A DNA stretch of 64,000 nucleotides from IMGVR_UViG_3300044846_005229:186001-250000; one strand, 5' to 3'. Counted from the stretch's first letter, positions 802-59,199 are shown. Notes: generated by a model not told the origin, from the letters alone. Translations and numbers: made by a program.

Positions 802-891
802 TAGGCGCGTAGGGAATCGAACCCTAACTAGCCGGTAATCTGCCGGAGAGGTCTTCATAAGGGACCCTGTGCTACCGTACACCACACGCCC
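802..891 (-). tRNA. tRNA with UAU anticodon (Ile, AUA-reading) and long variable arm
   Basis: GGGCGTG/CGCGCCT acceptor, GTGT/GCAC D stem, GGTC(C)/(A)GACC anticodon stem with loop CTTATGA, CCGG-CAGATTA-CCGG variable arm, TAGGG-TTCGATT-CCCTA T arm, A73; CCA not encoded. Confidence 0.8.
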
Positions 892-1304: not shown

Positions 1305-1376
1305 CACCCTGAGAGGGATTTGAACCCCCGACCGACGACTTAGAAGGTCGCTGCTCTTCCACTGAGCTACCAGGGC
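1305..1376 (-). tRNA. trnR: tRNA-Arg(UCU)
   Basis: GCCCTGG/TCAGGGT acceptor, GCTC/GAGC D stem, GCGAC-CTTCTAA-GTCGT anticodon arm, GGGGG-TTCAAAT-CCCTC T arm. Confidence 0.95.
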
Positions 1377-1427: not shown

Positions 1428-1455
1428 ATTATAGCACGTTTTTGGGCAAAGTCAA
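1428..1455 (-). promoter_or_regulatory. sigma70-like promoter upstream of tRNA-Arg
   Basis: TTGACT-16 nt-TATAAT with TG upstream of -10. Confidence 0.75.
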
Positions 1456-7853: not shown

Positions 7854-7965
7854 TGGGACCAGTAGGATTTGAACCTACACCTCTCCTTTAACGTAGGAAT
7901 TTAATTGCTGATGTATCTTTGACAAGATAACTTTCTTTAGCGCTCTGTCGTTGAGCTATGGTCCC
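7854..7965 (-). ncRNA. tRNA-like RNA with ~41-nt insert carrying a hairpin + CAGCAA between the D arm and an anticodon-like arm
   Basis: GGGACCA/TGGTCCC acceptor, GCTC/GAGC D stem, GTAGG-TTCAAAT-CCTAC T arm, TTCCT-ACGTTAA-AGGAG anticodon-like hairpin, insert containing TATCTT-GTCA-AAGATA-CAT-CAGCAA. Confidence 0.8.
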
Positions 7966-8054: not shown

Positions 8055-8072
8055 CGTTTGCCGAAGGCAAAG

Positions 8073-8199
8073 TCGAAGAGGCAAGATTCGAACTTGCGTA
8101 TGGCGGTTCCTTTAGCGCATTTGGTGTTGCTGAGCTACCTAAAGCATAACTAGATAGTCCTTTTGCATTACCGCCGCCTTACCACTTGGCTACTCTTCG
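8073..8199 (-). ncRNA. tRNA-like RNA (Cys-like scaffold) with enlarged anticodon loop carrying a hairpin + CAGCAA
   Basis: CGAAGAG/CTCTTCG acceptor, TAGCCAAGTGGTAAGGC D arm, GCGGT/ACCGC anticodon stem, GCAAG-TTCGAAT-CTTGC T arm; insert contains CTATCTAG/TTAGGTAG hairpin then CT-CAGCAA. Confidence 0.8.
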
Positions 8200-8407: not shown

Positions 8408-9914
8408 TCAGGCGAATACCATACCCACAGAGTCATACCTTTCAGTATATACCGCGTCCCGCATCAGGGACAATGGGGGTAATTGCATTGCCGGTAAGAA
8501 CTGCGGTCAGGATTGACGGAGAGCAACCGCTAACGAGAGCGGTACCGGAATCATGGACCTTCATCGGGACGTTATCTGAGGAATTGACATTCCAGAAGAT
8601 GACATCAGGCAAGCTATAACCAGCTTGGGCATACTTGATTCGAATTGCTTCGTAGTTAGTGACTTTTTTTCCGCTATACCCCCAACCAGAACCAGTGCCA
8701 CCCATGACAACACAGTCATCAAACTGCATGTCTGAGACAATAATCAGTTTGCGGGGCATGTCTGACTCTGGAATGTTGTTCCGAACTGCAGTATCCAGAA
8801 TAAGGTCAAACGTCTTTTGGATGTCAGTGTTACCACCCCAATCTGCTCGGCTCAGGTTTCTAACCTTGCTGGAGAGACTATTGCCAGTCACAGTTTGTAG
8901 GGAGGGGTTACCCGAAAATGTTAGAAACTTGTTTTTCCAGATGCCAGTATTACGCTCTGCGATATACATCGCCAGAGAGATGGATACTGCCATCGGACGA
9001 CCCTCCATGGAACCGCTAACATCGGCAACAACAAGCCCATTCAATTCCTTGCCTTCCATGTAGTTGGGTAGAGCCTGCCAGAGGAGTTCAAGAGTATCGT
9101 TTGATTCGTTGTTATAGAGACACTTCTCAACGATGTCATACGGGTACAAAGTACCGGCATTGATTTTTGCCTCGCCTTTCTTGACTGCATCGAGGTAAGA
9201 CTGGTAGCGAGCACCATCATGGTTAGCAAAAGCTTTCCGATACATGAAGCCTGCACGAGAAGGCAACTTGCTATACTCAATGGCGTCCCACTCACGGGCA
9301 CACATTGGTTGTTCTACGATATTGATTTGGGTGCGAAGCGCAGTCAGGGCCTTGCGGTATTGACGCTCATTCCAACCCATTGCCTTAGCGATAAGACGGC
9401 CAACCCGCTTGGATTCCTTGCTAGAAGCGTTAATGGAAGGTAGCCATTTTGCTAGTAGTGACACTGGGTTTCCAACTTCGGTGTTCAGGTCAGTATTAAG
9501 CTGCGTCTTAATTGCTTCTAGGGCGATGACCCAAACTAGCGTCCCTTCGAGGGCCACAACATCGTCCCAGCGACCGTACTGCGGGATCAGGCCTACCAGC
9601 TTAGCTCCAATGGTCGCATCATTGCGAACCAGCTCCTTGAAGACTTCCCGGAAGATTTTTCGTTCTCCTTGCCCAATCCCCCTAATATCACGTGCCCAAA
9701 ACAGGATCCGGGTCGCAGTTTCAGGATCTTCGGCATAGGCTGACTTAAAGAGTTTAATGGCTGCATCAACATTATCACGGCAAGCTGCGATTTTACCGAA
9801 AAGGTCTAGGTTCTTTTGGCCCGTGGACCTATAGGCCTTTGCGCCGTTTGCAGTTGTGGTGATATTGGAGTTGGTATCCAGTTGGTTCTCAAGTGCATTC
9901 AAAAAGGTTGTCAT
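8408..9914 (-). CDS. DUF2828 family TROVE/Ro60-like + vWA domain protein (apparent +1 frameshift in the G5 run at 8475-8479)
   Basis: TTANGAKAYRSTG, WARDIRG.GQGER, YGRWDD, AKWLP, MIDAS VVADVSGSM, IVSDMQFD; removing one C restores the C-terminus ITPLSLMRDAVYTERYDSV. Confidence 0.85.
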
Positions 9915-10064
9915 TTTTCTTCTCTCAAGTTGATTGTTTTGTGTTTGTGTTTCGGATACAAATAATAGCTGTATCAACTTTGCCCCTAGGAGTTAATTTT
10001 AGGGGTGGTGGTGGGGGGCACTGACGGCCCCGATATTGGGCAGTTTGTAACTTAGCTGGGTCAA

Positions 10065-14560: not shown

Positions 14561-15652
14561 TCAGCCACTCTTCTTCCCCTTAGATAGCAACCACTCATTA
14601 CTAATGGCCTTAAAGGAAAACTCAGAGTCATTGGACTTGAATACTAAGCCCTCACGTTTAACGTTAGGATTCATGGACGGGCCATCGGCGTACGCTAGTA
14701 GCTCATCTAGGTTGGCGAAACTATCGGTTACACACATTGCGGGGTGTAGGACAGGGGCATGGGTTAAATCAGCGCCTAATGGAACCAGGTACTTGTCCAA
14801 GAGGTTCATTCTGGCCCCTGGCTTCATGTAGGTCTGGTTGTCGATATCGAAGATGTCGAACAGATATAGCCGTTGTCCCTTGATTCCTTCCTGATTGCCC
14901 TGGATGCCTTCTCCAAGGGTTTCCGACTGCAAGGCAATACTGTGACCAGTCTTCCCATTGTATGCAAGCATAGCATCGATAATGCCCTGGTCCCTAGCAG
15001 CCTTCCAGAAACTATTGCCTTCGGTTTCCTTGAGATCAAGGTTACGGCTGCAAACCCCAATGTCACCGTCTTTGACGTAAATCGTACATGAAGATCCGTC
15101 GAGCTTCAGGGTAACTTCGTAGGTCTCATTCCTGTGGGTCTCAAAGATTTCGCTAGCGATATTCTGACAACGTTCCTGGTCTGTCTTCACAAGGAAGCTC
15201 GGGAAGTTGCCTTTTGCAATGCCAGCCAAACAAGCCGGTACAGGAGCCTCCCATTTCTGAATGCCGAGAATTTCGGTTACGTCGTCTCCTTCCTGAAGGC
15301 CCCTCTCAAATGCGGTGACATAGTAACTGAAGTCTACATAGAGCTTTAGAGAAATAGGCAACAGCAACCCTTGGCTGAGTTGCCCACGGAGCTTAACGGT
15401 CTTGAGACGTTCGCCCTTCACGCCGTTATACTCACGGGGCTCTTTCCCATTAGAAAGGAAGGGCGCCAACTCGTGAGGAATAAATGAGTCGGGTTCTGCG
15501 TAAATTACCAAATCCCCTACTTCATACTTCCCCACAGAATCCACAACCCACCAGCCATTCACACGGTAGGCACAGATTCTATCGGCTTCAGGGATGGGGC
15601 GAATCTCAGCAATGCGCTGGACAGATGCAAGTTTGCGTTCGATGTTTGCCAT
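14561..15652 (-). CDS. ATP-dependent RNA ligase, DRB0094/Rnl2-like family
   Basis: RKLASVQRI N-terminal OB-like module, KTDQERCQN, motif I KLDGSS, SRN, REGLVFK, FKAISNEWL. Confidence 0.92.
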   Translation of the reverse strand: MANIERKLASVQRIAEIRPIPEADRICAYRVNGWWVVDSVGKYEVGDLVIYAEPDSFIPHELAPFLSNGKEPREYNGVKGERLKTVKLRGQLSQGLLLPISLKLYVDFSYYVTAFERGLQEGDDVTEILGIQKWEAPVPACLAGIAKGNFPSFLVKTDQERCQNIASEIFETHRNETYEVTLKLDGSSCTIYVKDGDIGVCSRNLDLKETEGNSFWKAARDQGIIDAMLAYNGKTGHSIALQSETLGEGIQGNQEGIKGQRLYLFDIFDIDNQTYMKPGARMNLLDKYLVPLGADLTHAPVLHPAMCVTDSFANLDELLAYADGPSMNPNVKREGLVFKSNDSEFSFKAISNEWLLSKGKKSG

Positions 15653-23840: not shown

Positions 23841-24950
23841 CTACCGGATCCCAAGCAGTTTGTCAAGTTGTTGGGGCCGTAGGTCTGCTAGCCACTGCCG
23901 GAAGGTAGGGTACCTGCCGGAGCGTATTGCGAAACAGGCTGCCGATACTGAGGGGGCATCTTTGAGAATTGCAATGGCGAATTCCTTTTGCGTTAAGGCT
24001 CCATACTTAAGAAGCAGAGTCTCACATAAAGATTGCATCGCGGGGATAGCAGAGTCTAGATGAATCGAAAACTTGTCTCTATATTCTGGAAAGTGCAATA
24101 GAAACTCATCTAAATCGTCACTAAGAAACAATTCCGAAAAGTCTGGGTCGCCATTGTTCCATGCCCGGTGTAGTTGGCAGTATAATCTAGACTTAATCTT
24201 AACCCTTCCAACCCCATCAAACAATACATAACCTTCATGATTTGAATCTCGCTTTTCAACTTTGGTAAGTACAGAGTCAAGGTCACTGAATTCGTAAGAT
24301 GGGGCCACCACATAGCCATACCACCCAAACTCTTCCAGATCACACTCTTCGAAGTCCTGATCTCGGTCTCGTACTGCTAGTAAGGGAAGTTTGGGCGCAT
24401 CGTAGTTAATAACATCTTTATTATCTAGGTGACATAACTCAAAGATGTAGCAAATTGACGGGTCTAGGCATTCCTTTAAGTACCCTACTTTTTCGAATAC
24501 ATCCCAGAATAATTCATCAAAGGTTTTTTTAGTTTTTCCTACTAGGCCATCCCCTGCTACTGAACCAGAAGTTGAAACGAGCCATTGCCCCCTATACTCA
24601 AACAATTTAATTAAGGAGCCGGAAAATTTCTCATAAACCTTGGTGCGAGACCAATCTAACTGATGGCAATGGCCCTCACCAATGTTAAAGAATCTATCGA
24701 ACGCATATGCAACCAGGCGGTAATACGGCGAGTGATCCCCATCGTTATCAACACGCTCGACCACAGCACCACGGCAGGCACAAACCAGCGGATTTGATTT
24801 GGATGCTAAAATCGTCCCATATTTCAAATTAAAAAGGTTCGGATACCTCTCATCGCGAGTAACACGAATGTCATACTCGGCCAGCTCGTCCAGGGCATTG
24901 TAACCCCGCTCGTTAAGCCAGTCAATCAAGTAGTGGCGCAAGTTTTCCAT
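23841..24950 (-). CDS. T4 Rnl1-like RNA ligase with motif I variant KFSGS
   Basis: CRG, FDRFFN.GE, YEKFSGSL, IFEL, EGYV, RVKIKS..Y pattern of Rnl1 family. Confidence 0.85.
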   Translation of the reverse strand: MENLRHYLIDWLNERGYNALDELAEYDIRVTRDERYPNLFNLKYGTILASKSNPLVCACRGAVVERVDNDGDHSPYYRLVAYAFDRFFNIGEGHCHQLDWSRTKVYEKFSGSLIKLFEYRGQWLVSTSGSVAGDGLVGKTKKTFDELFWDVFEKVGYLKECLDPSICYIFELCHLDNKDVINYDAPKLPLLAVRDRDQDFEECDLEEFGWYGYVVAPSYEFSDLDSVLTKVEKRDSNHEGYVLFDGVGRVKIKSRLYCQLHRAWNNGDPDFSELFLSDDLDEFLLHFPEYRDKFSIHLDSAIPAMQSLCETLLLKYGALTQKEFAIAILKDAPSVSAACFAIRSGRYPTFRQWLADLRPQQLDKLLGIR

Positions 24951-30589: not shown

Positions 30590-32083
30590 TCAAGAGAGCA
30601 ACCGACTCCTGATATTAGCCAGACTGTTTACATCTTCGCCATATACGCGACCGTCCAGGAAAACCGTTTTTAATTCCCCTAGTCCTTCCTGCTCATGGGT
30701 TTGCTGCTCATGGAGGACAAAGTCATCTCCTTCTTTTTCAACGCGGAGTAAACCCTTGGCCGATTTTTTCGTTCCAGAGTCAGTGATTGGATCCTTAAAA
30801 ATTTCTACACCTTGACCATCAACTTGACCCCAAGTGGATTTGAAAGCCATGCCAAAAGTATCGCGAGTGTGATATTGATAGGAATAAGATCCTACACCAA
30901 GAACAACGTTGCTGCTGGCCCACTTGTTACGGTTCATATTTTCCAAGATAGAAAAAGCCCGTTGCAAGGTAATGGAATCACCGTAAATCAGACCAACCCT
31001 CGGATTAATTTCCCTGAAGCCACTTTCATTCACGGTGCCGCCAAACTCATCCCAAAGCAATTGCAGAGATCCCTTATGGGCAGGGCTGCCAGGTTCGGCA
31101 TCAGGATTACCGCAAAGGATATGTTCGGGGTTACCGCTATCACCCCTGAGTACAACCTTAGCAAGTCCCATAGCGTCCGGTTGACGGCTTAAGATAACAT
31201 CCTTAAGTTGAACAGCAATTTTAGTCAAGACATTCCAGTAATCCCAAGTGTCACTAACAATACTGACGATACCACTGGGGTACCTGTCTTGAATAAGGCG
31301 CCGGTAAGTTTCCAACTCATTATCTTTACCGCCAATGCACATTACACTGTGCTCAGTAGCAGGGACACCGCCCGCGATAAACTCAGAGCCAACATCATAG
31401 TAGTCTTCTAGGAAGTCGATCGAGGGGATATTGTCCGAACCTGTAAACGAGAAAAGATGACCAATACCATGGGCAGCCCCATCATGAATTCCACCAACAC
31501 CCCTCAACGAAAAGTCGTGCGCCTGGAAATTAACAAAGCTGGGGTCAGCTCCCGTCAATGCAGCATAACGATCTAGCAAACGACGAAACTCGTAAGCAAC
31601 GGTAGCGATATTGACTGTTTTCCAAATTTCCGACGAAAGGGCAGTTTCCACGTAGTTAGTCAACCAGTAGAATTCGTGAATAGTATTCTGGATCGTCAAA
31701 AATGGTACTCTCAAATTGACTCGGCTTCCCTCAGGCAAAGCTTTAACCCTAAGGGGCATATAGCCGAGGTCATGTAAATCAGCCAGGTGATCTACTCCAA
31801 CCGCCCCTGGGCCGAGGGCCGAATCCATACGCCTACGGTACTTTTCAAGTACTTGATCCTTTGGTTTATTGAAAAAGGAGTCATTCCACAAGTCTTGAAG
31901 ATACCATTTAAGAGTGCCTTGAATCCCTGCCACTACGATTTTATGATCGAAATCCGGTAGCATCTTAGCCAGACGGTCAGATCTAGCGGTTTGATTGGTG
32001 TATACGATTTCGGTTTTGTCAGGGTATTGGTAGATATGCCCAGTCTTGTAAAAGTCGGTTGCGTGGGGGGCAAAAAGTTTCAT
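30590..32083 (-). CDS. nadV: nicotinamide phosphoribosyltransferase-like protein (Namat of a NARP1-like pair)
   Basis: TDFYKTGH, HDFSLRG, PATEHSVM, SIVSDTWD, RGDSGNP, IYGDSIT, GVGSY, KDPITDSGTKKSAKG. Confidence 0.92.
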   Translation of the reverse strand: MKLFAPHATDFYKTGHIYQYPDKTEIVYTNQTARSDRLAKMLPDFDHKIVVAGIQGTLKWYLQDLWNDSFFNKPKDQVLEKYRRRMDSALGPGAVGVDHLADLHDLGYMPLRVKALPEGSRVNLRVPFLTIQNTIHEFYWLTNYVETALSSEIWKTVNIATVAYEFRRLLDRYAALTGADPSFVNFQAHDFSLRGVGGIHDGAAHGIGHLFSFTGSDNIPSIDFLEDYYDVGSEFIAGGVPATEHSVMCIGGKDNELETYRRLIQDRYPSGIVSIVSDTWDYWNVLTKIAVQLKDVILSRQPDAMGLAKVVLRGDSGNPEHILCGNPDAEPGSPAHKGSLQLLWDEFGGTVNESGFREINPRVGLIYGDSITLQRAFSILENMNRNKWASSNVVLGVGSYSYQYHTRDTFGMAFKSTWGQVDGQGVEIFKDPITDSGTKKSAKGLLRVEKEGDDFVLHEQQTHEQEGLGELKTVFLDGRVYGEDVNSLANIRSRLLS

Positions 32084-39920: not shown

Positions 39921-40165
39921 GGGGACCGAAGCCCCCCGCAATGAGTCAGAATGCTATCGCTCAAACGGCGACGGCAGTCCTCTCGAATTTGACGATTTTG
40001 TTAGCGTCTATGTTGTGCTTATGCAAGCGGCTTTCGGTAATTGGCTTGCTGTCGGTCGATTCCAGAGCGGACCCTCGAAAGGGAAATGGATCCGGGGCGA
40101 TTCGAACGCCCGTGTCGCGCAGTAGTGACAACTACCTACACCCAGTTTTTAGCCGTATGGTAGGG
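39921..40165 (-). ncRNA. ssrA: two-piece (circularly permuted) tmRNA; tag ANKIVKFERTAVAV*
   Basis: T arm GGGCG-TTCGAAT-CGCCC (40095-40111) and 3' acceptor CGGATCC-A precede a 12-nt spacer and 5' acceptor GGGTCCG with G3-U70; TAGAC-GCT resume context; tag ORF 39961-40005; outer ends approximate. Confidence 0.92.
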
Positions 40166-40177
40166 CTTTAACAATTA

Positions 40178-40423
40178 TTACCCGTTACAGTTAAAAGTCG
40201 ATGTAATCTCATACTGCCTAAGTAAGTTAAACAACTCAGTTTGAAGGTCTTCGAAGCCGCCCACAAGTTGATCCTGAGTGACCGCATAGCAAGGACCCAC
40301 TTTAGAGCCAGCCCAAGGTATGATTTGTTTGTGCTCTAGAATCTTGTTCCTGTACTTAAGAAGTAGGGAGTTAATCCCGGAGGCTAGCTGAACTTTATCG
40401 GATAGAACTATTTGTTTTAACAT
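40178..40423 (-). CDS. hypothetical protein
   Basis: Start MLKQIV. Confidence 0.55.
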   Translation of the reverse strand: MLKQIVLSDKVQLASGINSLLLKYRNKILEHKQIIPWAGSKVGPCYAVTQDQLVGGFEDLQTELFNLLRQYEITSTFNCNG

Positions 40424-43099: not shown

Positions 43100-44224
43100 C
43101 TAGCAATGATAGTGATAGAATTTTTCTATGGTATCACCACACAAATAGTTGATTAATTCGTCATCAATCGTGTTTGGTAAAACGCACTCATTTTTCATTA
43201 CGTGGTCGGCTTCGTCAAATAGTCGGTTTACAATAGAAATAAGTTCGCTATAGGTGACCCTACCATACTTAATATCAAGAAGGAACTCTGCGTCACCGAC
43301 CAATTTTCTATCTACGAATAACTTACCGGCCCGCATCCCTTCAATAGCCATTTTCATAAGCCTCACGCAATGACTAGCATTCTTACCATCATACCCACAA
43401 GCCCGTTCAATTTCAGATCGCTTGACATTTCTATTCGTCAACCAATCTTGATAGTTGCCCCATCTTTTTAGGTCTGCCCGGTATTGCTGACTGGAATGAA
43501 GCAAGGCCATGTATTCATCACTTGCCCTTGTGATTTTTTGTGTTTCGTCAAAGCATTGCGTTGGCAGAACACTCTGTTTCAGAATACCTTTCCAATCAAT
43601 CTGGTTGTTAAGTAGCTCATACAGCTCTGTTGAGGGTTGATAGTATTCAATTCTATCTTTAATCAACAGATACAAATACTCAATAAACGACTCGATCTGC
43701 GACGGTGTTAAGCTCGGTGAAGGAACTCCGTAGTCTTCCCACTCTGGTTTCCTTGTTGGTGGATCCCGCAGCCATTTACGGTGAGTTTCCATCTTTTTGA
43801 TTTGAGACTTTGCATACTGGACAAATGTGCCAGAGATTCTTTTGGAGATTAGTTTTGTTCGATTGTTGATCAGGGACTGCCCAAGGTAATCAAGGTAGAT
43901 ATAGCTATCGGGGGTCTGCCAAAGCATCTCCAGGATGTTGGGGTTTTGCGACCGTAACAGGCTGAGGTATCGCCTGATGCCATAAACTACTGAGTCGGAA
44001 TTGTCTAATTCAGGAAATCTTGTCCTAAAAGTTGGTTCCCCGTCATGCACCCACCCTTTATCCTTTTGCTCAAATGTTTCTAATGTAGTATAAAATCTCC
44101 TTGGTGCAACACAGATACCTTTAAAGTCAAGGTCTGACATTTCAGTATTTAGGCCATAGGCGTGACTACCTGACTTACAGAATAGAATCATTCCATCTTC
44201 AATTTCCTTTCGTGTAATTGTCAT
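43100..44224 (-). CDS. pol-beta superfamily nucleotidyltransferase (RlaP/NrdC.11-like)
   Basis: GSHAYGLNT..SD.DFKG, NPNILEML, GYDGKNASH..RL...A.E. Confidence 0.85.
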   Translation of the reverse strand: MTITRKEIEDGMILFCKSGSHAYGLNTEMSDLDFKGICVAPRRFYTTLETFEQKDKGWVHDGEPTFRTRFPELDNSDSVVYGIRRYLSLLRSQNPNILEMLWQTPDSYIYLDYLGQSLINNRTKLISKRISGTFVQYAKSQIKKMETHRKWLRDPPTRKPEWEDYGVPSPSLTPSQIESFIEYLYLLIKDRIEYYQPSTELYELLNNQIDWKGILKQSVLPTQCFDETQKITRASDEYMALLHSSQQYRADLKRWGNYQDWLTNRNVKRSEIERACGYDGKNASHCVRLMKMAIEGMRAGKLFVDRKLVGDAEFLLDIKYGRVTYSELISIVNRLFDEADHVMKNECVLPNTIDDELINYLCGDTIEKFYHYHC

Positions 44225-49948: not shown

Positions 49949-50265
49949 GCAGCTCGCAGATAATCTTTGTATACCTGGTAAGGGACACCCTTTTTAGAGC
50001 ACGCTTCGATTACACTCTCTGCTTTTACGCCAGGGCCCCATCTGTGTTGACAGCGACATTTAGCATAGTTACCATTATTAAAGACCCAAGTACGTGGAAA
50101 CTCTCCGCAATTAGGGCATAGATCCCACCCGGCTGTGGATTTAAGAGGTTCGTACCATTCGCCACAGCTGTCTTCCCACCTGTAGGTTTCAGTCATTGCC
50201 TGTGCGGTAGAGGTTGAATGTCGGTCAGTCATTTGGTTGGTTTTATCGCTAATAGGATTTATCAC
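49885..50265 (-). CDS. Lar-like Zn-ribbon protein
   Basis: CPNCGE.P...C.C...AWN pattern. Confidence 0.45.
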   Translation of the reverse strand: MINPISDKTNQMTDRHSTSTAQAMTETYRWEDSCGEWYEPLKSTAGWDLCPNCGEFPRTWVFNNGNYAKCRCQHRWGPGVKAESVIEACSKKGVPYQVYKDYLRAAWNEHVSTLSILTPQAGEVEA

Positions 50266-50819
50266 GACCGCACCTCCCTGGCTTGGGGAATGGTAACAAG
50301 ACCAGTAGGCGCAAGTCCACGGGCTATGCTGCCTATGACTCGCAGCACAGAAAGATCCAATTCTTCCTGGGGCCCATTATTGTCGAAATAAATATCAGCA
50401 TCACCTACTACAAGCTCCATTGAATATGCGCTTTCCGGTGGCCTGCGCTTTGAGGCGTCAACCCAGATAACGTGATCAAACAACCCAGCCTCGCGGCAGG
50501 CGTTAAATTCATCCCGTTTTCGCATTCCAACATACACATCATACCCACGGCTCAACATTGTCTTGGCCGTTCTCGTCTTGTCGGGGGTATTGTATTCGGA
50601 AATTAAGTCTGCCCATGTTTTTCGGTGGTTTACTCGATCGGCAAACATCTCATCAAAGGTTTTGTAGCGCTGGCGGCCCCATGTGGGCCAAATAAATTCC
50701 TCTCCGACAAAAAGTGAAGAAGAGGAAAACGAGAGGTCCATTTTGCCGCAGATTTTTTCGGCGACGGTATCCTTGCCGTGGCGGGCGTGGCCGATGATTA
50801 GGAGTTTGGGTTTAGTCAT
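50262..50819 (-). CDS. P-loop kinase, dNMP-kinase-like
   Basis: KLLIIGHARHGKDTVAE Walker A-like; G.R...EF...R. Confidence 0.7.
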   Translation of the reverse strand: MTKPKLLIIGHARHGKDTVAEKICGKMDLSFSSSSLFVGEEFIWPTWGRQRYKTFDEMFADRVNHRKTWADLISEYNTPDKTRTAKTMLSRGYDVYVGMRKRDEFNACREAGLFDHVIWVDASKRRPPESAYSMELVVGDADIYFDNNGPQEELDLSVLRVIGSIARGLAPTGLVTIPQAREVRS

Positions 50820-51002
50820 TTTGGATAAGTGGTGTGGTCGCTCATGGCTGGGACTCCACGGCATGGGGTAAAGGAATGGCATTGTGAGGGAGCGTGTGGG
50901 TTTCTTGACCGTTTGACCGGCTATAGCTCCAGTTGCTATACCTTGAGTCACTCTCCGGGTGAAACCTCCAGCACTGCCCTTCCGCATCGTAATACTCCTC
51001 CT

Positions 51003-51731
51003 CTAATGGCTGTTCACTCGTTGCCACCGGCACCCCGCCGGGGCGGGCTTGGCTATTGCCAGGCGAACCTCGGTAGCCACGTCCAGTAAGAACGAGTCCG
51101 AGCAGCTCTGATTCACTAGCCCGCCAACGGCCTGGCCGCAGTCAATCAAAACATATCGAAGAAAGGCAGCACGCGATTCCTGCTGCTGAAGCAACGTGGC
51201 GGCGCGGGCGAGCTTGGCGCTTGCGTCGGGGTACTCATCAGCGGTCTTGGCAACCCCTTCCCCTAGCCACGTCACCAACTCCCTTACCTCCGCAGCGAGC
51301 ACCTCTGGCGCTGGCAAGGTGGCGGGACGGCCCCAATGCTCCAGCGCCTCGCCGATCAGCGCAGTTAGCTGGCTCTGGGCCACGGCGGGCCAACCATCGG
51401 GCCAGTCAGGGCGGCTTTCAATCCCCCGATCAATAGCAACATCGCCGTCGTCTGTTTCCGGCGCTGGTGGGGTGGCGGGGGTACGGTTCAGCGCTCGGAC
51501 AACCTCCTCGATCGGAACCATCGCCCCATCAAAAAGAATTGCGGCGCCGTCTCCGCAGACACCTTCAGACCAGCGACCCTCCCCCCCCGGCTGAGCCAGG
51601 GCGGCTCGGGCGCGGGTGATCAGATCGCGGTATTCGTGATAGGGGTTGGCGCCGTCGTATTCAGCCAACGGTTGCAATAGCTCGGCACACAGTGCGCGAA
51701 AGTCAGTGTTAATGTCTGGGTTAGTCATCAT
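51003..51731 (-). CDS. hypothetical protein (GC-rich segment)
   Basis: Start MMTNPDINTDFRALCAELL. Confidence 0.6.
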   Translation of the reverse strand: MMTNPDINTDFRALCAELLQPLAEYDGANPYHEYRDLITRARAALAQPGGEGRWSEGVCGDGAAILFDGAMVPIEEVVRALNRTPATPPAPETDDGDVAIDRGIESRPDWPDGWPAVAQSQLTALIGEALEHWGRPATLPAPEVLAAEVRELVTWLGEGVAKTADEYPDASAKLARAATLLQQQESRAAFLRYVLIDCGQAVGGLVNQSCSDSFLLDVATEVRLAIAKPAPAGCRWQRVNSH

Positions 51732-52174
51732 AGTAAGTTTTCGGGTTCCAGGGGTGGAACGGTAAGGTTTCCCCAACGGGCGAGAATGGCGCGGGCAAAG
51801 GCGATCACGTGGTAACTGTGCGTTGCATGGCTCCACGTAGCAAGCCACAAAGCGTCTAGCTCGGCTGTAGTCGGCATCTCCCCCTCCGGCTCGGCCAAAG
51901 CAGCGGGCGGCACCAGCCACTCCAGGTTGCACTGCTCGCACTGGGAGATAAATGCTTCCAGCGATTCGGCCCAAACGTGGCCGATCCCGCGTGATCCAAC
52001 CTGCACAAGCTCGGGAGACCATTCGGGTGAATGAACGGTTCTGGCTATGTCTCGGCAAGTGTCAGCCTTGCCATGATCCAAGTCAACAATACAGACGATT
52101 GCTGCGGTATGGGCCAGTTCCCAAAGCTGGCGATAATCGCGTGAGGTTGGGTAGTTGGCAGTTGGGACGATCAT
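51728..52174 (-). CDS. hypothetical protein
   Basis: ATGA-coupled. Confidence 0.65.
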   Translation of the reverse strand: MIVPTANYPTSRDYRQLWELAHTAAIVCIVDLDHGKADTCRDIARTVHSPEWSPELVQVGSRGIGHVWAESLEAFISQCEQCNLEWLVPPAALAEPEGEMPTTAELDALWLATWSHATHSYHVIAFARAILARWGNLTVPPLEPENLL

Positions 52175-52608
52175 GGTGCCTCCGTTGCGGTGATTTGCTG
52201 TTGCTCTAATCCTGAGGCAATAAATACCCCCCTCAACTTATCAACTACATCTGTTTTGAACGTCTCAACCTGCGAACGCAACTCTTCCAAAGAGTCGCAT
52301 TCAAACGGTTTCTCTTGCATTTCTTCGCCCAGGATCAATACAGTCACGGTGCCATCCCATTTTGGTCCGTAGTGGGTCTTTGGGGGATAGAAGCGACTGC
52401 TAAAACTAACCACTGGCCCGTCATAGTCCAATTTAAATCCGCAATCCCATCTCCAGGTCGGCTCATGCAGCTTGTAACTATTGGTGTTGGCCTGTGATTC
52501 CCATTGGTAGGCCTGGTCCCAACTGGTTGGGCAATCTCCCAAAGGTTCACCGCCATCGAAAATAATTTGGTTGTTTGTGGTGGGCATGTCAATGTGGTTG
52601 GTGCTCAT
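52171..52608 (-). CDS. hypothetical protein
   Basis: ATGA-coupled. Confidence 0.65.
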   Translation of the reverse strand: MSTNHIDMPTTNNQIIFDGGEPLGDCPTSWDQAYQWESQANTNSYKLHEPTWRWDCGFKLDYDGPVVSFSSRFYPPKTHYGPKWDGTVTVLILGEEMQEKPFECDSLEELRSQVETFKTDVVDKLRGVFIASGLEQQQITATEAP

Positions 52609-52856
52609 GTTGCCTCCTTAATTGGAATACACAGCCAGTAGCGATGCTGTTCGTTGACGCGGTGGCTAGGCCTTTCTGGGTCGATATCCCAGGTTGTACG
52701 CGCCTCCATCAATGGATAGTCAGCGCCGGGAAAGCCATAGCTAGTAAACATATCGCATTCAAATGATGCTGTGCCAAATGGCACAAGCTCAGGGTGCCGA
52801 GCGCGAATCGCTGCGAAGACTCTGAGGCTGGTTTCGATTGTTCTGTAGTCCTTCAT
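52605..52856 (-). CDS. hypothetical protein
   Basis: ATGA-coupled. Confidence 0.6.
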   Translation of the reverse strand: MKDYRTIETSLRVFAAIRARHPELVPFGTASFECDMFTSYGFPGADYPLMEARTTWDIDPERPSHRVNEQHRYWLCIPIKEAT

Positions 52857-53908
52857 CGGTCAACCTCCCGGCGAAGATCATTGGCGCTGCCTTTGTTCCC
52901 GACAAGATCAAGCCAGGCCGCTACCTCGCGGATTGCGGCGCGGGTTGCCTCTTCATCGCTGGTCGCCATGCCTTTCCAGAAAGAGTGTAAGGCACTCTTC
53001 ACCAATCCCCCGGCAGGCAAGACCGGTGAAGCAGGTTGGGCGACAACATCAGATTGCCCCCACCGATTGATTTCGGCCCACTCTTGGTCAGTGTATTCGC
53101 TCTCGCCATTCACATGGGGGGCGGCAAGTTGGGTAACTGGCGGGGCAAGCTCCCGTAGGTCAACCAGGGACTGCGCCGCAGGATCTCCCCACTTTGCTTG
53201 CTTGTTTATGAAGGCCCACGCCTTTGCGTCCAGATCTTGTTCTGAATAGGGGCCAGGCGGGATTTGCTCCGATTCGGGCTGGGTCAGGGCACCCCGCTCT
53301 TCCCCCGGATACGGATCGCAAACCTCCAACCGTGCGCATGTCATTGCAGTCTGCTCCAAAACATCACCCCAGGGGATACCGGCGTTTTCCGTAATCGACA
53401 TTAATACCAGCAAAACATCAGCAGCTTCACTGAGCGGATCGCCATGCTTGCCCCGGAGGGCTTCGGTCAACTCGGAAGCTTCCAGGTGAAGGTACACGCC
53501 TCGGCTAGACCAACTAAGGTCCCACCCGCGCTTTTTGCACATGGCCAACACACGGGCTGGCAGTGCGTTTGGGGGCTGAGCGGCTCCGAAGTCGTTTGCC
53601 TCTATTAAATCAATGGCGTCCAGAATCCGAGAACAATGCCATACTCGTTCGTTATAGTCCTCTGATTCGTCTGCCAACACGGCACGCAAACCGATAACAA
53701 TTCCTTCCCATGTCATTCCAGTTCCCCCAGGGGGCTGAGTGGCGGCCTCTGACGAGGCCAAAGCGTCTTCAATCTCAGACAAAGTCTTCTGTACGTCAAG
53801 CAACTGAGCGTCCTTGGATTCTGCTGAGACGCAGCAAAGGCCCTCAGACACCTCATTCAATGCCTCTTTAACCTTCTCGGAGCATAGTGCCATAAGATTG
53901 CTATTCAT
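52853..53908 (-). CDS. multidomain protein with central MazG-like NTP pyrophosphohydrolase domain
   Basis: LHLEASELTEALR...LSEAADVLL (E-xx-E...E-xx-D). Confidence 0.65.
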   Translation of the reverse strand: MNSNLMALCSEKVKEALNEVSEGLCCVSAESKDAQLLDVQKTLSEIEDALASSEAATQPPGGTGMTWEGIVIGLRAVLADESEDYNERVWHCSRILDAIDLIEANDFGAAQPPNALPARVLAMCKKRGWDLSWSSRGVYLHLEASELTEALRGKHGDPLSEAADVLLVLMSITENAGIPWGDVLEQTAMTCARLEVCDPYPGEERGALTQPESEQIPPGPYSEQDLDAKAWAFINKQAKWGDPAAQSLVDLRELAPPVTQLAAPHVNGESEYTDQEWAEINRWGQSDVVAQPASPVLPAGGLVKSALHSFWKGMATSDEEATRAAIREVAAWLDLVGNKGSANDLRREVDR

Positions 53909-54801
53909 GGTTTTTCTGATTGGTAATTGGTGGTTGATTGTTGATGGTTTAATAAAGCTTTCAACTCAGCTATTTCAGCGGCCTGTCGTTGTTCAAGAGT
54001 GGGGGGCTTGGGTATCGCACGGTACGCGGCTAGGGCGTCTTCTTTCGTGGGCCAACTGAATTTATTTAGGAATTCTAGGTATGTAAGGGAGTTGGGCAAC
54101 CACCATTCACTTTCTTTATTTAAATAGTGGTTCCGGTCTCTTACTACCCACTTTGTGTTCCCACGGTCACACGCTTCAATATAAATTTCGCTGTGATGGT
54201 GTGTATAATGGAACCTAAAAGGTACTGGCTCCGGTATGGCCCCCGAAAAAGAAGGCTCTTTGATCCAACGGACTAAGCCCAAAAGGGTATCCGTAGCATC
54301 CATTGATTCCCAATCGTCATCTCCGTCGTACCTATTGAGTCGTTCAGTGTAAACCCAGCGTAGTGTACCGTCCACATTTTGTTCTAAATCACCATCAATA
54401 AACCCCTGACCAGCCAAAAAGCGTAGAATCTCGTCGTCAGTCCTAGTATATTTGGTACCACCAGAAAGCTCAGAAATTCTATCATCTTGCTTCGAGATGA
54501 ATTCAGAGGCTCGGCGAAGTAGGCCAGGAGAAACCTCGTGGCACTGACCAAAGTAATCTAAACTGTGGGCCGTCACCCATAGAGAAGACACGAGATCTAT
54601 TAGCTCCTTTTCATCTATTGGGTTCGTTTGGTTTGTGGTGTTGTCAATCTCGCTTAGCAAGGCAGTTCTATACTGCCCCATTGATTGAAAACTCATAGCG
54701 AAATCATCGTCAGCGATTAGGCTTCGAATATCGTTTGTCATGTTTGTTTTAGGGGTTACAAGGTTTGTCAGAAAAGGTTTAATGCCATCGCCTGGGCCCA
54801 A
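53905..54801 (-). CDS. hypothetical protein (start probably MTNDIR)
   Basis: ORF in array. Confidence 0.65.
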   Translation of the reverse strand: MGPGDGIKPFLTNLVTPKTNMTNDIRSLIADDDFAMSFQSMGQYRTALLSEIDNTTNQTNPIDEKELIDLVSSLWVTAHSLDYFGQCHEVSPGLLRRASEFISKQDDRISELSGGTKYTRTDDEILRFLAGQGFIDGDLEQNVDGTLRWVYTERLNRYDGDDDWESMDATDTLLGLVRWIKEPSFSGAIPEPVPFRFHYTHHHSEIYIEACDRGNTKWVVRDRNHYLNKESEWWLPNSLTYLEFLNKFSWPTKEDALAAYRAIPKPPTLEQRQAAEIAELKALLNHQQSTTNYQSEKP

Positions 54802-57966: not shown

Positions 57967-59199
57967 TCACTCAATCCAATGGGGGACCACTCGGCTTGTG
58001 TCAAGGACAATCGGCCGGTCATGATCCCTAATGATGATGCCTGCGGGTTCATTACCGACAACCCAAGACCCGATGACTGCCCGATTGTCGCCGTCCTGGA
58101 AAAGATCGGCTTTTTTCTGGTAGATGCGGGGTCCATCATACATGCCAGTAGTTCTAGAGGTTACCACACCTGACTCAACAATGTCAATGTTGGCCCCTTC
58201 CCGGCTCAGCATAGGCTTTACCACGTAGGATGTGGGATTTAGTTTTCCGGATGAAAACGCCTCTAATTGTTCTGGTGTTCCATGCTCCCGGAGATTCAGC
58301 CAATCCCAATCATCCACCGGGATGCCACCCTCAGTGAAACTGGCTGGAAGGATGTTAGGGTGGTCTGGAAACATCTCATGGAGAATAGGCAAGATGCCCT
58401 TATTGCTCAGGATTGATTTCCAGATTGGCTCTACAATTCCAGAGGAACCTTTAATAGTGTGTAATCCAAACTCATCTCCCATCATCCATTCCCATGGGTA
58501 TAGCTTGAACCAATACTTAATCGGATTCTCTTGGATGTCAGTGAAGTTTTCTCCATTCCAGCCAATGTCCCCCAAATCAATAAAATCTGTAGTTAACCCA
58601 GCCTGAGTAGCTAAATCTTGGAAGTAAACCAGGGTCTGATACTCCTCTAGGCTTTCAGAATAACCTGCAAATACAAACTTGTGGCCGAACGGTACCCTTT
58701 GCCTGATTTCCTTGAATTGGTCAATAAGTTTTTCATGCAAAGAGTTGAATTGGTCTTTTCCGGGCTTAACATCCTGCAACCAGAACCATTGCATTAGCGC
58801 CGATTCAATAACCATTGTAGGAGTGTCTGCATTGTATTCCAACATCTTAGGTTGGCTGTCCCCCGTATATGCAAAGTCAAACCTGCCATATAAAGATGGG
58901 TCGCATTGCTTCCAGGATTTGGAAATCGCGGAGTGGTATGCTGAGGGAATTCCGATTTTTGCCATTAACTCTGAATCACCCACAACCTTGTCCACAGCAT
59001 CGAGGCACCGGAGTTGGCATTCCCGTGTGGCATCTTCAAGTTCGTCAATTTCAGCCATAGAAAACTCATAGGCCACAGATTCATCCCAATAGGTTCCCTC
59101 CCCATCTTTTGATGAGGTACCCGATGTGTGGTAGGTGAACCCAATCTCTTCAGCTTTTTCTTGCCAATTAACGCGAGGTTGTAGGGTGTGACGTTTCAT
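57967..59199 (-). CDS. glutathionylspermidine synthase family ATP-grasp ligase (YgiC/YjfC-like)
   Basis: YW.E...Y.F, SLYGRFDF, KMLEYNADTPT, KLYPWEW, EP.WK..LSNK..L..L...FP.HPN.LP, SREGAN, GSW. Confidence 0.92.
   Translation of the reverse strand: MKRHTLQPRVNWQEKAEEIGFTYHTSGTSSKDGEGTYWDESVAYEFSMAEIDELEDATRECQLRCLDAVDKVVGDSELMAKIGIPSAYHSAISKSWKQCDPSLYGRFDFAYTGDSQPKMLEYNADTPTMVIESALMQWFWLQDVKPGKDQFNSLHEKLIDQFKEIRQRVPFGHKFVFAGYSESLEEYQTLVYFQDLATQAGLTTDFIDLGDIGWNGENFTDIQENPIKYWFKLYPWEWMMGDEFGLHTIKGSSGIVEPIWKSILSNKGILPILHEMFPDHPNILPASFTEGGIPVDDWDWLNLREHGTPEQLEAFSSGKLNPTSYVVKPMLSREGANIDIVESGVVTSRTTGMYDGPRIYQKKADLFQDGDNRAVIGSWVVGNEPAGIIIRDHDRPIVLDTSRVVPHWIE

What the first reader, a model, noticed from the sequence alone, without database searches (positions are those of the whole stretch)
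802..891. Rare tRNA(UAU) with a class II long variable arm and G37
Seen: anticodon loop CU-UAU-GA, C31-A39 mismatch, extra base at 26/27, long variable arm, A73, C4-G69. Established: most bacteria read AUA with lysidine-modified tRNA-Ile(CAU) via TilS; UAU tRNAs are rare, and long variable arms are normally restricted to Leu/Ser/Tyr/Sec. Inference: it may bypass TilS or an anticodon nuclease, or be charged by LeuRS/SerRS and mistranslate AUA.
Basis: partly seen in the sequence, partly recalled or inferred. Interest (0 to 1): 0.6.

Follow-up and report, generated by a model that had tools for sequence, protein, structure and literature searches.

The report
Phage AUA tRNA with decoy anticodon arm
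This lake-phage gene is a real, conserved tRNA that reads the rare isoleucine codon AUA, and its "long variable arm" is a second anticodon-like hairpin showing GAU, the triplet that isoleucyl-tRNA synthetase reads, so it may be how the tRNA gets charged without the host's lysidine enzyme.

Summary
Window 802-891(-) is a 90-nt tRNA with anticodon UAU, loop CU-UAU-GA, a C31·A39 mismatch, two bases at position 26, A73, C4-G69 and an extra arm. It lies in a complete 279-kb lake-water jumbo phage, next to tRNA-Arg(UCU).

It belongs to a large phage family. I found 20 distinct close relatives, and 68 more distinct long tRNA(UAU) in a scan that put no constraint on the extra arm. Cultured Vibrio, Aeromonas, Acinetobacter and Lactobacillus phages carry it too. 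All five helices covary.

The extra arm is not a Leu/Ser/Tyr-type variable arm. In 63 of 68 sequences it is a 7-nt loop Y-A-G-A-U-N-R, against 0 of 184 Leu/Ser/Tyr controls. The pair equivalent to 29-41 is C-G in 53 of 63, and a 5-6-nt linker follows. G34, A35, U36, A38 and C29-G41 are published bacterial IleRS identity elements.

ATA codons in this phage substitute like ATT/ATC, not like Leu codons, so mistranslation is not supported.

Best reading (inferred, untested): a TilS-independent tRNA-Ile. The UAU arm decodes and the GAU arm recruits host IleRS, which handles UAU anticodons poorly. G37 is peculiar to the window's clade.

The parts
802..891 (-). whole tRNA(UAU) gene, 90 nt, discriminator A73 at 802, no encoded CCA
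   Evidence: ARAGORN; Rfam tRNA 35.9 bits; conserved family
885..891 (-). acceptor stem, 5' strand (pairs with 803-809); G1·U72, C4-G69
   Evidence: All 7 pairs are standard in 20/20 family members with compensatory changes, and 100% paired in 37 wider members
869..882 (-). D arm (GUGU / 6-nt loop ACGGUA / GCAC)
   Evidence: Segmentation. G18 G19 are present; the loop is one base shorter than in other subfamilies
850..866 (-). hairpin 1 = decoding anticodon arm: 5-bp stem with C31·A39, loop CUUAUGA, anticodon UAU at 857-859
   Evidence: UAU is invariant in the 20 sequences found without constraining this loop, with Y32, U33 (C33 in two) and R37. The stem covaries
832..846 (-). hairpin 2 = extra arm: CCGG / CAGAUUA / CCGG, with GAU at 838-840; proposed mimic of the tRNA-Ile(GAU) anticodon arm
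   Evidence: Loop is Y-A-GAU-N-R in 63/68 sequences found without constraining this arm, 0/184 in Leu/Ser/Tyr controls. The 29-41-equivalent pair is C-G in 53/63 while the 30-40 equivalent varies freely. The helix covaries
827..831 (-). 5-nt linker (CUAGU) between hairpin 2 and the T stem, the length of a class I variable loop
   Evidence: The linker is 5-6 nt in 57/63 family members. With a general hairpin finder it is 1 nt in 104 and 2 nt in 31 of 184 Leu/Ser/Tyr tRNAs
810..826 (-). T arm (UAGGG / UUCGAUU / CCCUA)
1305..1376 (-). neighbouring tRNA-Arg(UCU), syntenic partner in the window's clade and in Acinetobacter and Aeromonas phages
1428..1455 (-). sigma-70-like promoter match (TTGACT-16-TATAAT, 11/12) upstream of tRNA-Arg; it could drive tRNA-Arg, a small ORF and tRNA(UAU)
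   Evidence: Consensus scan only; weak

Best explanation
The gene encodes a phage tRNA-Ile that decodes the rare codon AUA with an unmodified-at-the-gene-level UAU anticodon, so it does not need the host's lysidine synthetase TilS. It is a five-helix tRNA with two anticodon-like hairpins. Hairpin 1 (Y32-U33-UAU-R37, constant 5-bp stem) is the arm the ribosome reads. Hairpin 2 (7-nt loop Y-A-GAU-N-R, C-G at the 29-41-equivalent pair, followed by a 5-nt linker) copies the anticodon arm of the major tRNA-Ile(GAU). It offers host IleRS the G34-A35-U36-A38-C29:G41 determinants that the UAU arm lacks. The tRNA would thus be charged with isoleucine by an enzyme that otherwise handles UAU anticodons poorly. 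Together with the adjacent tRNA-Arg(UCU), it supplies decoders for A-ending codons that the phage uses often. SHOWN: a real, conserved, covarying tRNA family; co-conservation of UAU and GAU loops; ATA evolving as Ile; no phage TilS or IleRS. INFERRED: charging by IleRS, and that hairpin 2 is what IleRS reads.
For: Gene and fold. Purifying selection with compensatory changes in all five helices: and (96.1% of cells paired against 64.7% in shuffles; covariation score 0.838 against 0.22; 0/500 shuffles as high). The two loops confirm each other. Sequences found through the D arm and hairpin 2 all carry UAU in a canonical loop. Sequences found through the UAU loop and T arm carry GAU at the centre of hairpin 2 in 63/68, against 0/184 Leu/Ser/Tyr controls. 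In hairpin 2 the 29-41-equivalent pair is C-G in 53/63 and the 31-39 equivalent is C-G in 45/63, while the 30-40 equivalent varies freely. In hairpin 1 the 29-41 pair is mostly G-C. The published bacterial Ile identity set is A73, C4-G69, C29-G41, G/L34, A35, U36, t6A37, A38 (PMC9976931). E. coli IleRS charges tRNAIle2(UAU) about 360-fold worse than the LAU form (PMC3575796 Table 1). ATA substitutes like ATT/ATC, not like Leu codons. No TilS-type domain in the window phage's genome. No class Ia synthetase in that genome or in 5 related records. In the window's clade hairpin 1 also lacks A37 (G37), so it lacks two strong IleRS determinants.
Against: No charging, modification or structural data exist; recognition of hairpin 2 by IleRS is inference from sequence. 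Hairpin 2 has A, not U, at the position equivalent to 33, and U as often as A at 37, so it is not a full copy. t6A37, a strong E. coli IleRS determinant, could only form in hairpin 1 in about half of the family. Its stem is often only 3-4 bp. Geometry is untested: either the two hairpins must swap places on the D stem, or hairpin 2 must swing beside hairpin 1. Lactobacillus phages carry UAGAAAA (GAA, not GAU) in this loop, and 5 of 68 long tRNA(UAU) lack the motif. Normal-size tRNA(UAU) genes without any extra arm are about as common in phages, so the arm is not indispensable. The model built on the window-like subfamily finds ordinary tRNA-Leu as its best matches in sampled bacterial genomes. 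The host is not identified. RNA-library contigs over the region do not prove a mature tRNA.
Confidence: 0.5

Rival explanations
1. It is an Ile-accepting AUA decoder, but hairpin 2 has another job. It could stabilise the five-way junction, act as a handle for a U34/A37 modification or processing enzyme, block MetRS or wobble misreading of AUG, or shield or decoy against a host tRNA nuclease.
For: ATA behaves as Ile. RNA ligase and RNA-repair genes lie in the window. C33 variants of the anticodon loop exist (L043, L054). Normal-size tRNA(UAU) genes exist without the arm. Lactobacillus phages have GAA in the loop.
Against: It does not explain why the invariant bases are exactly G-A-U at the centre of a 7-nt loop with R at position 7 and C-G at the 29-41 equivalent, which is the IleRS set. 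The family spans phages of unrelated hosts, which argues for a universal partner rather than a phage-specific or host-specific factor.
Confidence: 0.27
2. It is charged by LeuRS (or SerRS) because of its class II shape and A73, and it inserts Leu or Ser at AUA, as nematode nev-tRNA-Ile(UAU) is leucylated in vitro.
For: A73, an extra arm, and a D arm like the phage's tRNA-Leu. The best bacterial matches of the family model are tRNA-Leu. UAU is one change away from the Leu anticodon UAA. Precedents: PMC3333845 and allo-tRNAs (PMC5389517).
Against: The ATA substitution profile equals that of ATT/ATC (Leu share 0.13 against 0.15 and 0.13) and is unlike Leu codons (0.58-0.69). ATA is used at 9.5 per 1000 codons. 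The extra arm differs from Leu/Ser/Tyr arms: 7-nt loop and 5-nt 3' linker, against 3-4-nt loops and a 1-nt linker. G73, typical of Ser identity, is absent.
Confidence: 0.08
3. Hairpin 2 (GAU) is the true anticodon arm, followed by a normal 5-nt variable loop, and hairpin 1 is an inserted extra hairpin. The molecule would be an ordinary AUC/AUU decoder with an ornament.
For: The 5-6-nt linker after hairpin 2 looks like a class I variable loop. A few members have the exact loop CUGAUAA (L199). Another tRNA-like gene in the window (7854-7965) has an extra hairpin at the same place.
Against: Hairpin 2 has A instead of the near-universal U33 in 57/63, a pyrimidine at 37 in about half, and a variable 3-5-bp stem. 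Hairpin 1 has Y32, U33, R37 and a constant 5-bp stem, and keeps UAU in every member found without constraining it. The phages already carry a normal tRNA-Ile(GAU).
Confidence: 0.08
4. It is a tRNA-like RNA that is not used in translation (regulatory, mobile-element relic or pseudogene), as was suggested for acidobacterial allo-tRNA(UAU).
For: Allo-tRNA(UAU) variants were inactive in a Ser-dependent reporter (PMC5389517). The fold is no more stable than shuffles (z = -0.37).
Against: Every helix is maintained by compensatory changes. CCA is encoded in most subfamilies. The genes sit inside phage tRNA arrays. The anticodon loop keeps canonical decoding features.
Confidence: 0.04

Closest known systems
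tRNA-Ile(UAU) of TilS-less bacteria (Mycoplasma mobile type; 'tRNA-Ile3' in tRNAscan-SE 2.0)
   Same: UAU anticodon reading AUA without lysidine; A37 in most family members; A73.
   Different: Those are normal class I tRNAs, and the organism adapted its IleRS (Arg865) and ribosome to them (PMC3575796). Here the tRNA carries an additional GAU hairpin and must work with unadapted host enzymes.
Class II tRNAs (Leu, Ser, Tyr)
   Same: An extra helix between the anticodon arm and the T arm; overall length 85-95 nt.
   Different: Their arms mostly have 3-4-nt loops of no fixed sequence and 0-2 nt before the T stem. Here the loop is 7 nt with invariant GAU and the linker is 5-6 nt.
allo-tRNA(UAU) of Acidobacteria and others (Mukai et al., PMC5389517)
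   Same: A UAU anticodon combined with an extra arm. The authors note 'possible five-stem-junction structures' and found them inactive as Ser inserters, which would also be expected of Ile acceptors.
   Different: Allo-tRNAs are defined by 8/4 or 9/3 acceptor/T helices, G73/U73, and a long D stem with a tetraloop. This family is 7/5 with A73 and a 4-bp D stem with a 6-7-nt loop, and is phage-borne. Their sequences could not be read here, so a link is untested.
Nematode nev-tRNA-Ile(UAU) (PMC3333845, PMC4300185)
   Same: A V-arm-bearing tRNA with a UAU anticodon.
   Different: Eukaryotic and leucylated in vitro through a Leu-type arm. Here AUA evolves as Ile and the arm carries Ile marks.
Anticodon mimics outside tRNAs (viral tRNA-like structures, synthetase mRNA operators)
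   Same: A hairpin that presents anticodon bases to a synthetase away from the decoding position.
   Different: Those are not decoding tRNAs. Here the mimic would sit inside a working tRNA beside the real anticodon.

Membership tests
tRNA (Rfam RF00005) | Cloverleaf with acceptor, D, anticodon and T arms scoring above the gathering score | tested here: met
   35.9 bits against 29; ARAGORN call
tRNA (Rfam RF00005) | Helices maintained by compensatory substitutions among homologues | tested here: met
   (22 of 25 pairs with double changes; 96.1% paired)
Bacterial tRNA-Ile identity set (A73, C4-G69, C29-G41, G/L34, A35, U36, t6A37, A38; PMC9976931) | A73 and C4-G69 in the acceptor stem | tested here: met
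   Window: both present. A73 in all 20 sequences found without constraining it; C4-G69 in 18/20 of the close set and 35/68 of the wider set
Bacterial tRNA-Ile identity set (A73, C4-G69, C29-G41, G/L34, A35, U36, t6A37, A38; PMC9976931) | G34 or lysidine34, A35, U36, A37, A38 and C29-G41 in the anticodon arm | tested here: inconclusive
   Not met in the decoding arm of the window tRNA: U34, G37, U29-A41. Largely met in the extra arm: G-A-U 63/63, R38 61/63, C-G at the 29-41 equivalent 53/63
Bacterial tRNA-Ile identity set (A73, C4-G69, C29-G41, G/L34, A35, U36, t6A37, A38; PMC9976931) | Aminoacylation by IleRS | not testable with these tools
   Only indirect: ATA evolves as Ile
Class II tRNA (Leu/Ser/Tyr type) | Variable arm with a short loop of no fixed sequence and 0-2 unpaired bases before the T stem | tested here: not met
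   7-nt loop with invariant GAU and a 5-nt linker; in controls the loop is 3-4 nt in 130/170 arms with a hairpin found, and the 3' flank is 0-2 nt in 149/170
Class II tRNA (Leu/Ser/Tyr type) | Anticodon of Leu, Ser or Tyr | tested here: not met
   UAU
allo-tRNA (PMC5389517) | 8/4 or 9/3 acceptor/T-stem composition | tested here: not met
   7 acceptor pairs and 5 T pairs, all maintained
allo-tRNA (PMC5389517) | G73 or U73; long D stem with tetraloop; 6-bp anticodon stem | tested here: not met
   A73; 4-bp D stem with a 6-7-nt loop; 5-bp anticodon stem
Mycoplasma-type tRNA-Ile(UAU) system | Class I size tRNA with a co-adapted IleRS (basic residue at the E. coli W905 position) | tested here: not met
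   The tRNA is 90 nt with an extra arm. There is no phage IleRS. The host IleRS is unknown
nev-tRNA (nematodes) | Leucylation, so that AUA is read as Leu | tested here: not met
   ATA substitution profile equals that of Ile codons. This is indirect; charging was not tested

The most novel reading that the evidence does not exclude
Phages have evolved a 'two-anticodon' tRNA that splits the two readings of an anticodon between two hairpins. A GAU decoy arm is read by isoleucyl-tRNA synthetase and a UAU arm is read by the ribosome. This would let one gene decode AUA as Ile in any host, independent of TilS/lysidine and without retuning IleRS. It would be a natural example of synthetase identity moved from the anticodon to a separate module. 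The acidobacterial 'allo-tRNA(UAU)' group may be the same invention.
Probability: 0.45. Interest if true: 0.9.

Novelty: new variant of a known kind. Interest (0 to 1): 0.8.

Why it matters
AUA is the one sense codon for which bacteria need a dedicated essential enzyme, TilS, because IleRS and MetRS both read the anticodon. A tRNA that carries its own synthetase-recognition module beside the decoding anticodon would be a new solution to that problem. It would explain how phages of very different hosts supply an AUA decoder. It would also offer a natural design for engineering tRNAs whose anticodon can be changed without losing their amino-acid identity. The genes already sit in GenBank phage records, annotated simply as tRNA-Ile. 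Cultured systems exist (Vibrio phage Thalassa, Aeromonas phage 1233, Acinetobacter phage vB_AbaS_qsb1), so the idea is directly testable.

Tried and rejected
- BLAST of the window and of the tRNA against cultured phages found nothing. Later queries with other family members did find cultured phages.
- The scan of 185,579 species genomes with the D-arm plus extra-arm pattern gave only 3 hits. None is a tRNA, nor is one of the metagenome hits.
- The family model found no member in 302 sampled Pseudomonadota and Bacillota genomes. The best matches were ordinary tRNA-Leu and one tRNA-Lys. This is a sample, not proof of absence.
- Synechococcus phage B3, the nearest cultured relative by helicase (48% identity), lacks the extra-arm motif.
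- 8/4 allo-tRNA fold: rejected, because all 7+5 pairs are maintained.
- A 9-nt anticodon loop or frameshifting reading: the 26a-44 contact is G·U, G·A or G·G in relatives. Relatives with C31-G39 have a plain 7-nt loop.
- Hairpin-2 loop as a codon mimic (A-U-N) kissing the UAU anticodon: position 6 is U as often as A, and G3 would be unexplained.
- Hairpin 2 as an MS2-type or other known protein-binding hairpin: no real match; considered from memory only.
- Phage-encoded TilS or IleRS/LeuRS: none found.
- Supplementary sequences of allo-tRNA(UAU) were not held.
- Literature searches for a two-anticodon or extra-arm phage tRNA-Ile found no description.
- Metatranscriptome contigs of relatives cover the region, but they are contigs in RNA libraries and do not show a mature tRNA.
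- The host could not be identified, so host AUA usage and host IleRS type were not examined.

Full report
WHAT IS THERE. ARAGORN finds a 90-nt tRNA with anticodon UAU at window 802-891 on the minus strand. The Rfam tRNA model scores it 35.9 bits, above the gathering score of 29, when the region is searched alone. The whole-window run with fast filters missed it. Read directly, the RNA has these parts:
- a 7-bp acceptor stem with G1·U72 and C4-G69;
- U8;
- a 4-bp D stem with a short 6-nt loop that keeps A14, G18, G19 and A21;
- two bases (A, G) where position 26 normally stands alone;
- a 5-bp anticodon stem whose last pair is C31·A39;
- the loop C-U-UAU-G-A;
- a 3-nt linker;
- an extra hairpin CCGG/CAGAUUA/CCGG;
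- a 5-nt linker CUAGU;
- a standard T arm;
- discriminator A73, with no encoded CCA.

CONTEXT. The window is bases 186,001-250,000 of a 279,339-bp virus record with direct terminal repeats, rated complete.
- Nearly all genes lie on one strand.
- The phage carries 21-23 tRNA genes, including a normal tRNA-Ile(GAU) and two CAU tRNAs.
- The DNA occurs in many lake-water metagenomes.
- The nearest cultured phages, by a helicase at 48% identity, are Synechococcus phages B3 and B23. A picocyanobacterial host is therefore likely but not shown.
- A permuted, cyanobacterial-type tmRNA gene in the window points the same way.
- The phage has no TilS-type domain. Neither it nor five related records has an Ile/Leu/Val/Met-type synthetase.
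- It uses ATA for 17% of Ile codons and AGA+AGG for 47% of Arg codons.
- The tRNA sits about 400 bases downstream of tRNA-Arg(UCU). A near-consensus sigma-70 promoter match lies upstream of that gene (consensus match only).

IT IS A CONSERVED GENE. Related IMG/VR contigs carry the same gene in the same place beside tRNA-Arg(UCU). The tRNA is 96-99% identical, while the flanking protein is only 70-89% identical. The few changes are compensatory:
- U29-A41 becomes C-G;
- U6·G67 becomes U-A;
- C31·A39 becomes C-G in one lineage.
The anticodon UAU never changes. Position 37 is G only in the window's clade and A elsewhere.

A pattern on the D arm and extra arm, which left the anticodon arm free, found members in 10 viral and 25 metagenome contigs. 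These give 20 distinct sequences, all with UAU in a canonical loop. In these 20, all acceptor, D, T and extra-arm pairs are standard pairs, with many double changes. Only the 31-39 pair is often a mismatch.

THE EXTRA ARM IS AN ANTICODON-ARM LOOK-ALIKE. It returned 71 distinct tRNA(UAU) genes, of which 68 are 87-99 nt long.
- In 63 of the 68, the extra arm is a hairpin of at least 3 bp closing a 7-nt loop.
- Loop position 1 is C or U. Position 2 is A in 57. Positions 3-5 are G-A-U in all 63. Position 6 is any base. Position 7 is A or G in 61.
- None of 184 Leu, Ser or Tyr tRNAs from the same contigs has such a hairpin. Their loops are mostly 3-4 nt, and 0-2 bases separate the arm from the T stem. 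Here the separation is 5-6 bases.
- Numbering the extra arm as if it were an anticodon arm, the 29-41 pair is C-G in 53 of 63 and the 31-39 pair is C-G in 45 of 63. The 30-40 pair between them varies freely (GC 22, AU 17, UA 12, CG 7, UG 5).
- In the real anticodon arm, 29-41 is mostly G-C.
- A covariance model built on five members recovered 39 members from these contigs. On the 37 distinct ones, 96.1% of cells pair against 64.7% in shuffles. The covariation score is 0.838 against 0.22. All five helices, the extra arm included, show changes on both sides. That alignment is fitted to the model, so it leans towards the structure. The independent parse agrees.

WHY THIS POINTS TO IleRS. The published identity set of bacterial tRNA-Ile is A73, C4-G69, U12-A23, D-loop bases, C29-G41, G34 or lysidine-34, A35, U36, t6A37 and A38 (PMC9976931). 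E. coli IleRS charges tRNAIle2 with a UAU anticodon about 360 times less efficiently than the lysidine form. The tryptophan responsible is conserved in TilS-bearing bacteria (PMC3575796). A phage tRNA with UAU is therefore expected to be a poor substrate of an ordinary host IleRS. The window tRNA's decoding arm lacks G34/L34, A37 and C29-G41. Its extra arm supplies G34, A35, U36, A38 and C29-G41 in a 7-nt loop.

The two hairpins spring from the same junction and are of similar length. The 5-nt linker after hairpin 2 has the length of a class I variable loop. Either hairpin could therefore plausibly stack on the D stem. The natural reading is a division of labour: hairpin 2 is presented to IleRS and hairpin 1 to the ribosome. 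Hairpin 1 keeps the decoding signature (Y32, U33, R37, constant 5 bp). Hairpin 2 does not (A at 33, a pyrimidine at 37 in about half, a 3-5-bp stem). This step is inference; nothing here measures charging.

WHAT AUA MEANS IN THIS PHAGE. I fetched three related contigs (201, 87 and 71 kb) and aligned 269 orthologous ORF pairs codon by codon.
- Where an ATA codon has changed, the partner encodes Ile 0.37, Val 0.22, Leu 0.13.
- For ATT the values are 0.38, 0.23 and 0.15. For ATC they are 0.43, 0.24 and 0.13.
- Leu codons give Leu 0.58-0.69 and Ile 0.05-0.09.
ATA is therefore under selection as isoleucine, with no excess exchange with Leu. This argues against a Leu- or Ser-charged tRNA that is used at any appreciable level.

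DISTRIBUTION.
- The long form occurs in cultured phages, annotated simply as tRNA-Ile. Examples are Vibrio phage Thalassa and many relatives, Vibrio phage henriette 12B8, Acinetobacter phage vB_AbaS_qsb1 and Aeromonas phage 1233 (loops CAGAUAA or CAGAUUA; the last two again beside tRNA-Arg(UCU)).
- Lactobacillus phages Semele, 3-521 and ENFP1 also matched; in Semele, the only one read, the loop is UAGAAAA, i.e. GAA instead of GAU.
- It was not found in cellular genomes. A pattern scan of one genome per species gave only non-tRNA chance hits. The model found only ordinary tRNA-Leu and tRNA-Lys in 302 sampled genomes.
- Normal-size tRNA(UAU) genes are also frequent in viral contigs (83 distinct). 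The extra arm is one of two phage solutions, not a necessity.

EXPRESSION. Two metatranscriptome runs hold contigs of close relatives (90-95% alike) that span the tRNA and its flanks. These are assembled contigs from RNA libraries and cannot show a processed tRNA.

COMPARISON WITH WHAT IS KNOWN.
- tRNA-Ile(UAU) is known in a few TilS-less bacteria, where IleRS and the ribosome are adapted to it.
- Extra-arm tRNAs with non-Leu/Ser/Tyr anticodons are known as nematode nev-tRNAs, which are leucylated, and as bacterial allo-tRNAs.
[quoted passage not shown] It was described as having possible five-stem junctions, and it failed in a serine-dependent reporter. An Ile acceptor would fail that test too. 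A link is possible, but the defining 8/4 or 9/3 helices and G73/U73 are not met here, and the sequences could not be read.
- Eight of the nine literature searches were aimed at this; none found a tRNA with a second, synthetase-directed anticodon arm, or any account of this phage family. The library does not hold most subscription journals, so this is not proof of novelty.

VERDICT. The mistranslation reading is not supported, and the TilS-bypass reading is. I put about 0.95 on a functional tRNA gene, about 0.75-0.8 on Ile-charged AUA decoding, and about 0.5 on the extra arm being the IleRS recognition module.

Noticed in passing
window 39921-40183 (-): A permuted (two-piece) tmRNA gene of the cyanobacterial type (Rfam cyano_tmRNA 72.8 bits; tmRNA_permuted 56.1 bits) encoded by the phage.
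   Followed up: no
window 7854-7965 (-): A 112-nt tRNA-like gene (Rfam tRNA 47.8 bits) with five helices. After the D arm comes a long extra hairpin, then a hairpin with loop ACGUUAA (GUU, the Asn anticodon, with C at 33), a 5-nt linker GAGGU and a T arm; discriminator A. This is another extra hairpin at the D/anticodon junction in the same phage.
   Followed up: partly
window 8072-8199 (-): A 128-nt tRNA-like gene (47.6 bits) with a roughly 60-nt insert enclosed by a 6-bp anticodon-type stem. It is too short for a group I intron; its nature is unknown.
   Followed up: partly
own genome G000:C1:260307-260387 (-), outside the window: An 81-nt tRNA(GUU) with G73 and a short extra arm (GUC-GAAA-GAC): a second extra-arm tRNA with a class I anticodon in this phage.
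   Followed up: no
window 23841-24950, 14561-15652, 43100-44224, 8442-9977 (all -): A set of RNA-repair-type genes: a T4 Rnl1-like RNA ligase, a second RNA ligase with a PHA02142 OB domain, an RlaP nucleotidyltransferase and a DUF2828/DUF7788 protein. This suggests an arms race with tRNA-cleaving host defences.
   Followed up: no
window 30590-32083 (-) and 57967-59199 (-): A nicotinamide/nicotinate phosphoribosyltransferase and a glutathionylspermidine synthase homologue (429.7 bits), both auxiliary metabolic genes.
   Followed up: no
window 50001-54000: G+C rises to 0.53-0.56 against about 0.45 elsewhere; possibly recently acquired DNA.
   Followed up: no
L043:4403-4492 (-), L054:919-1008 (-); also an RNA-library contig at window 860: Natural variants of the family with C33 instead of the near-universal U33 in the decoding loop (CCUAUAA, CCUAUGA).
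   Followed up: no
L041:6131-6218 (+): An 88-nt tRNA(CCA) with G73 whose long variable region contains ACAGAUAAU, the same CAGAUAA motif, in a contig that also has the long tRNA(UAU). It could be chance, a relic, or a second use of the motif.
   Followed up: no
L039:5396-5486 (-), L042:4273-4362 (+), L052:3973-4060 (-): Other extra-arm tRNAs with class I anticodons in tRNA-rich phage contigs: Lys(UUU) of 90-91 nt and Glu(UUC) of 88 nt. Their arms do not mimic the cognate anticodon.
   Followed up: partly
L214:184-274 and 299-389 (Lactobacillus phage Semele): Two long five-helix tRNAs in tandem. One is called Tyr(ata) by ARAGORN and the other is tRNA(UAU). Their extra-arm loops are CAGAAAG and UAGAAAA (GAA instead of GAU).
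   Followed up: no
whole genome G000: AGA+AGG make up 47% of Arg codons, and the phage carries tRNA-Arg(UCU) next to tRNA(UAU). The same pairing recurs in Acinetobacter and Aeromonas phages.
   Followed up: partly
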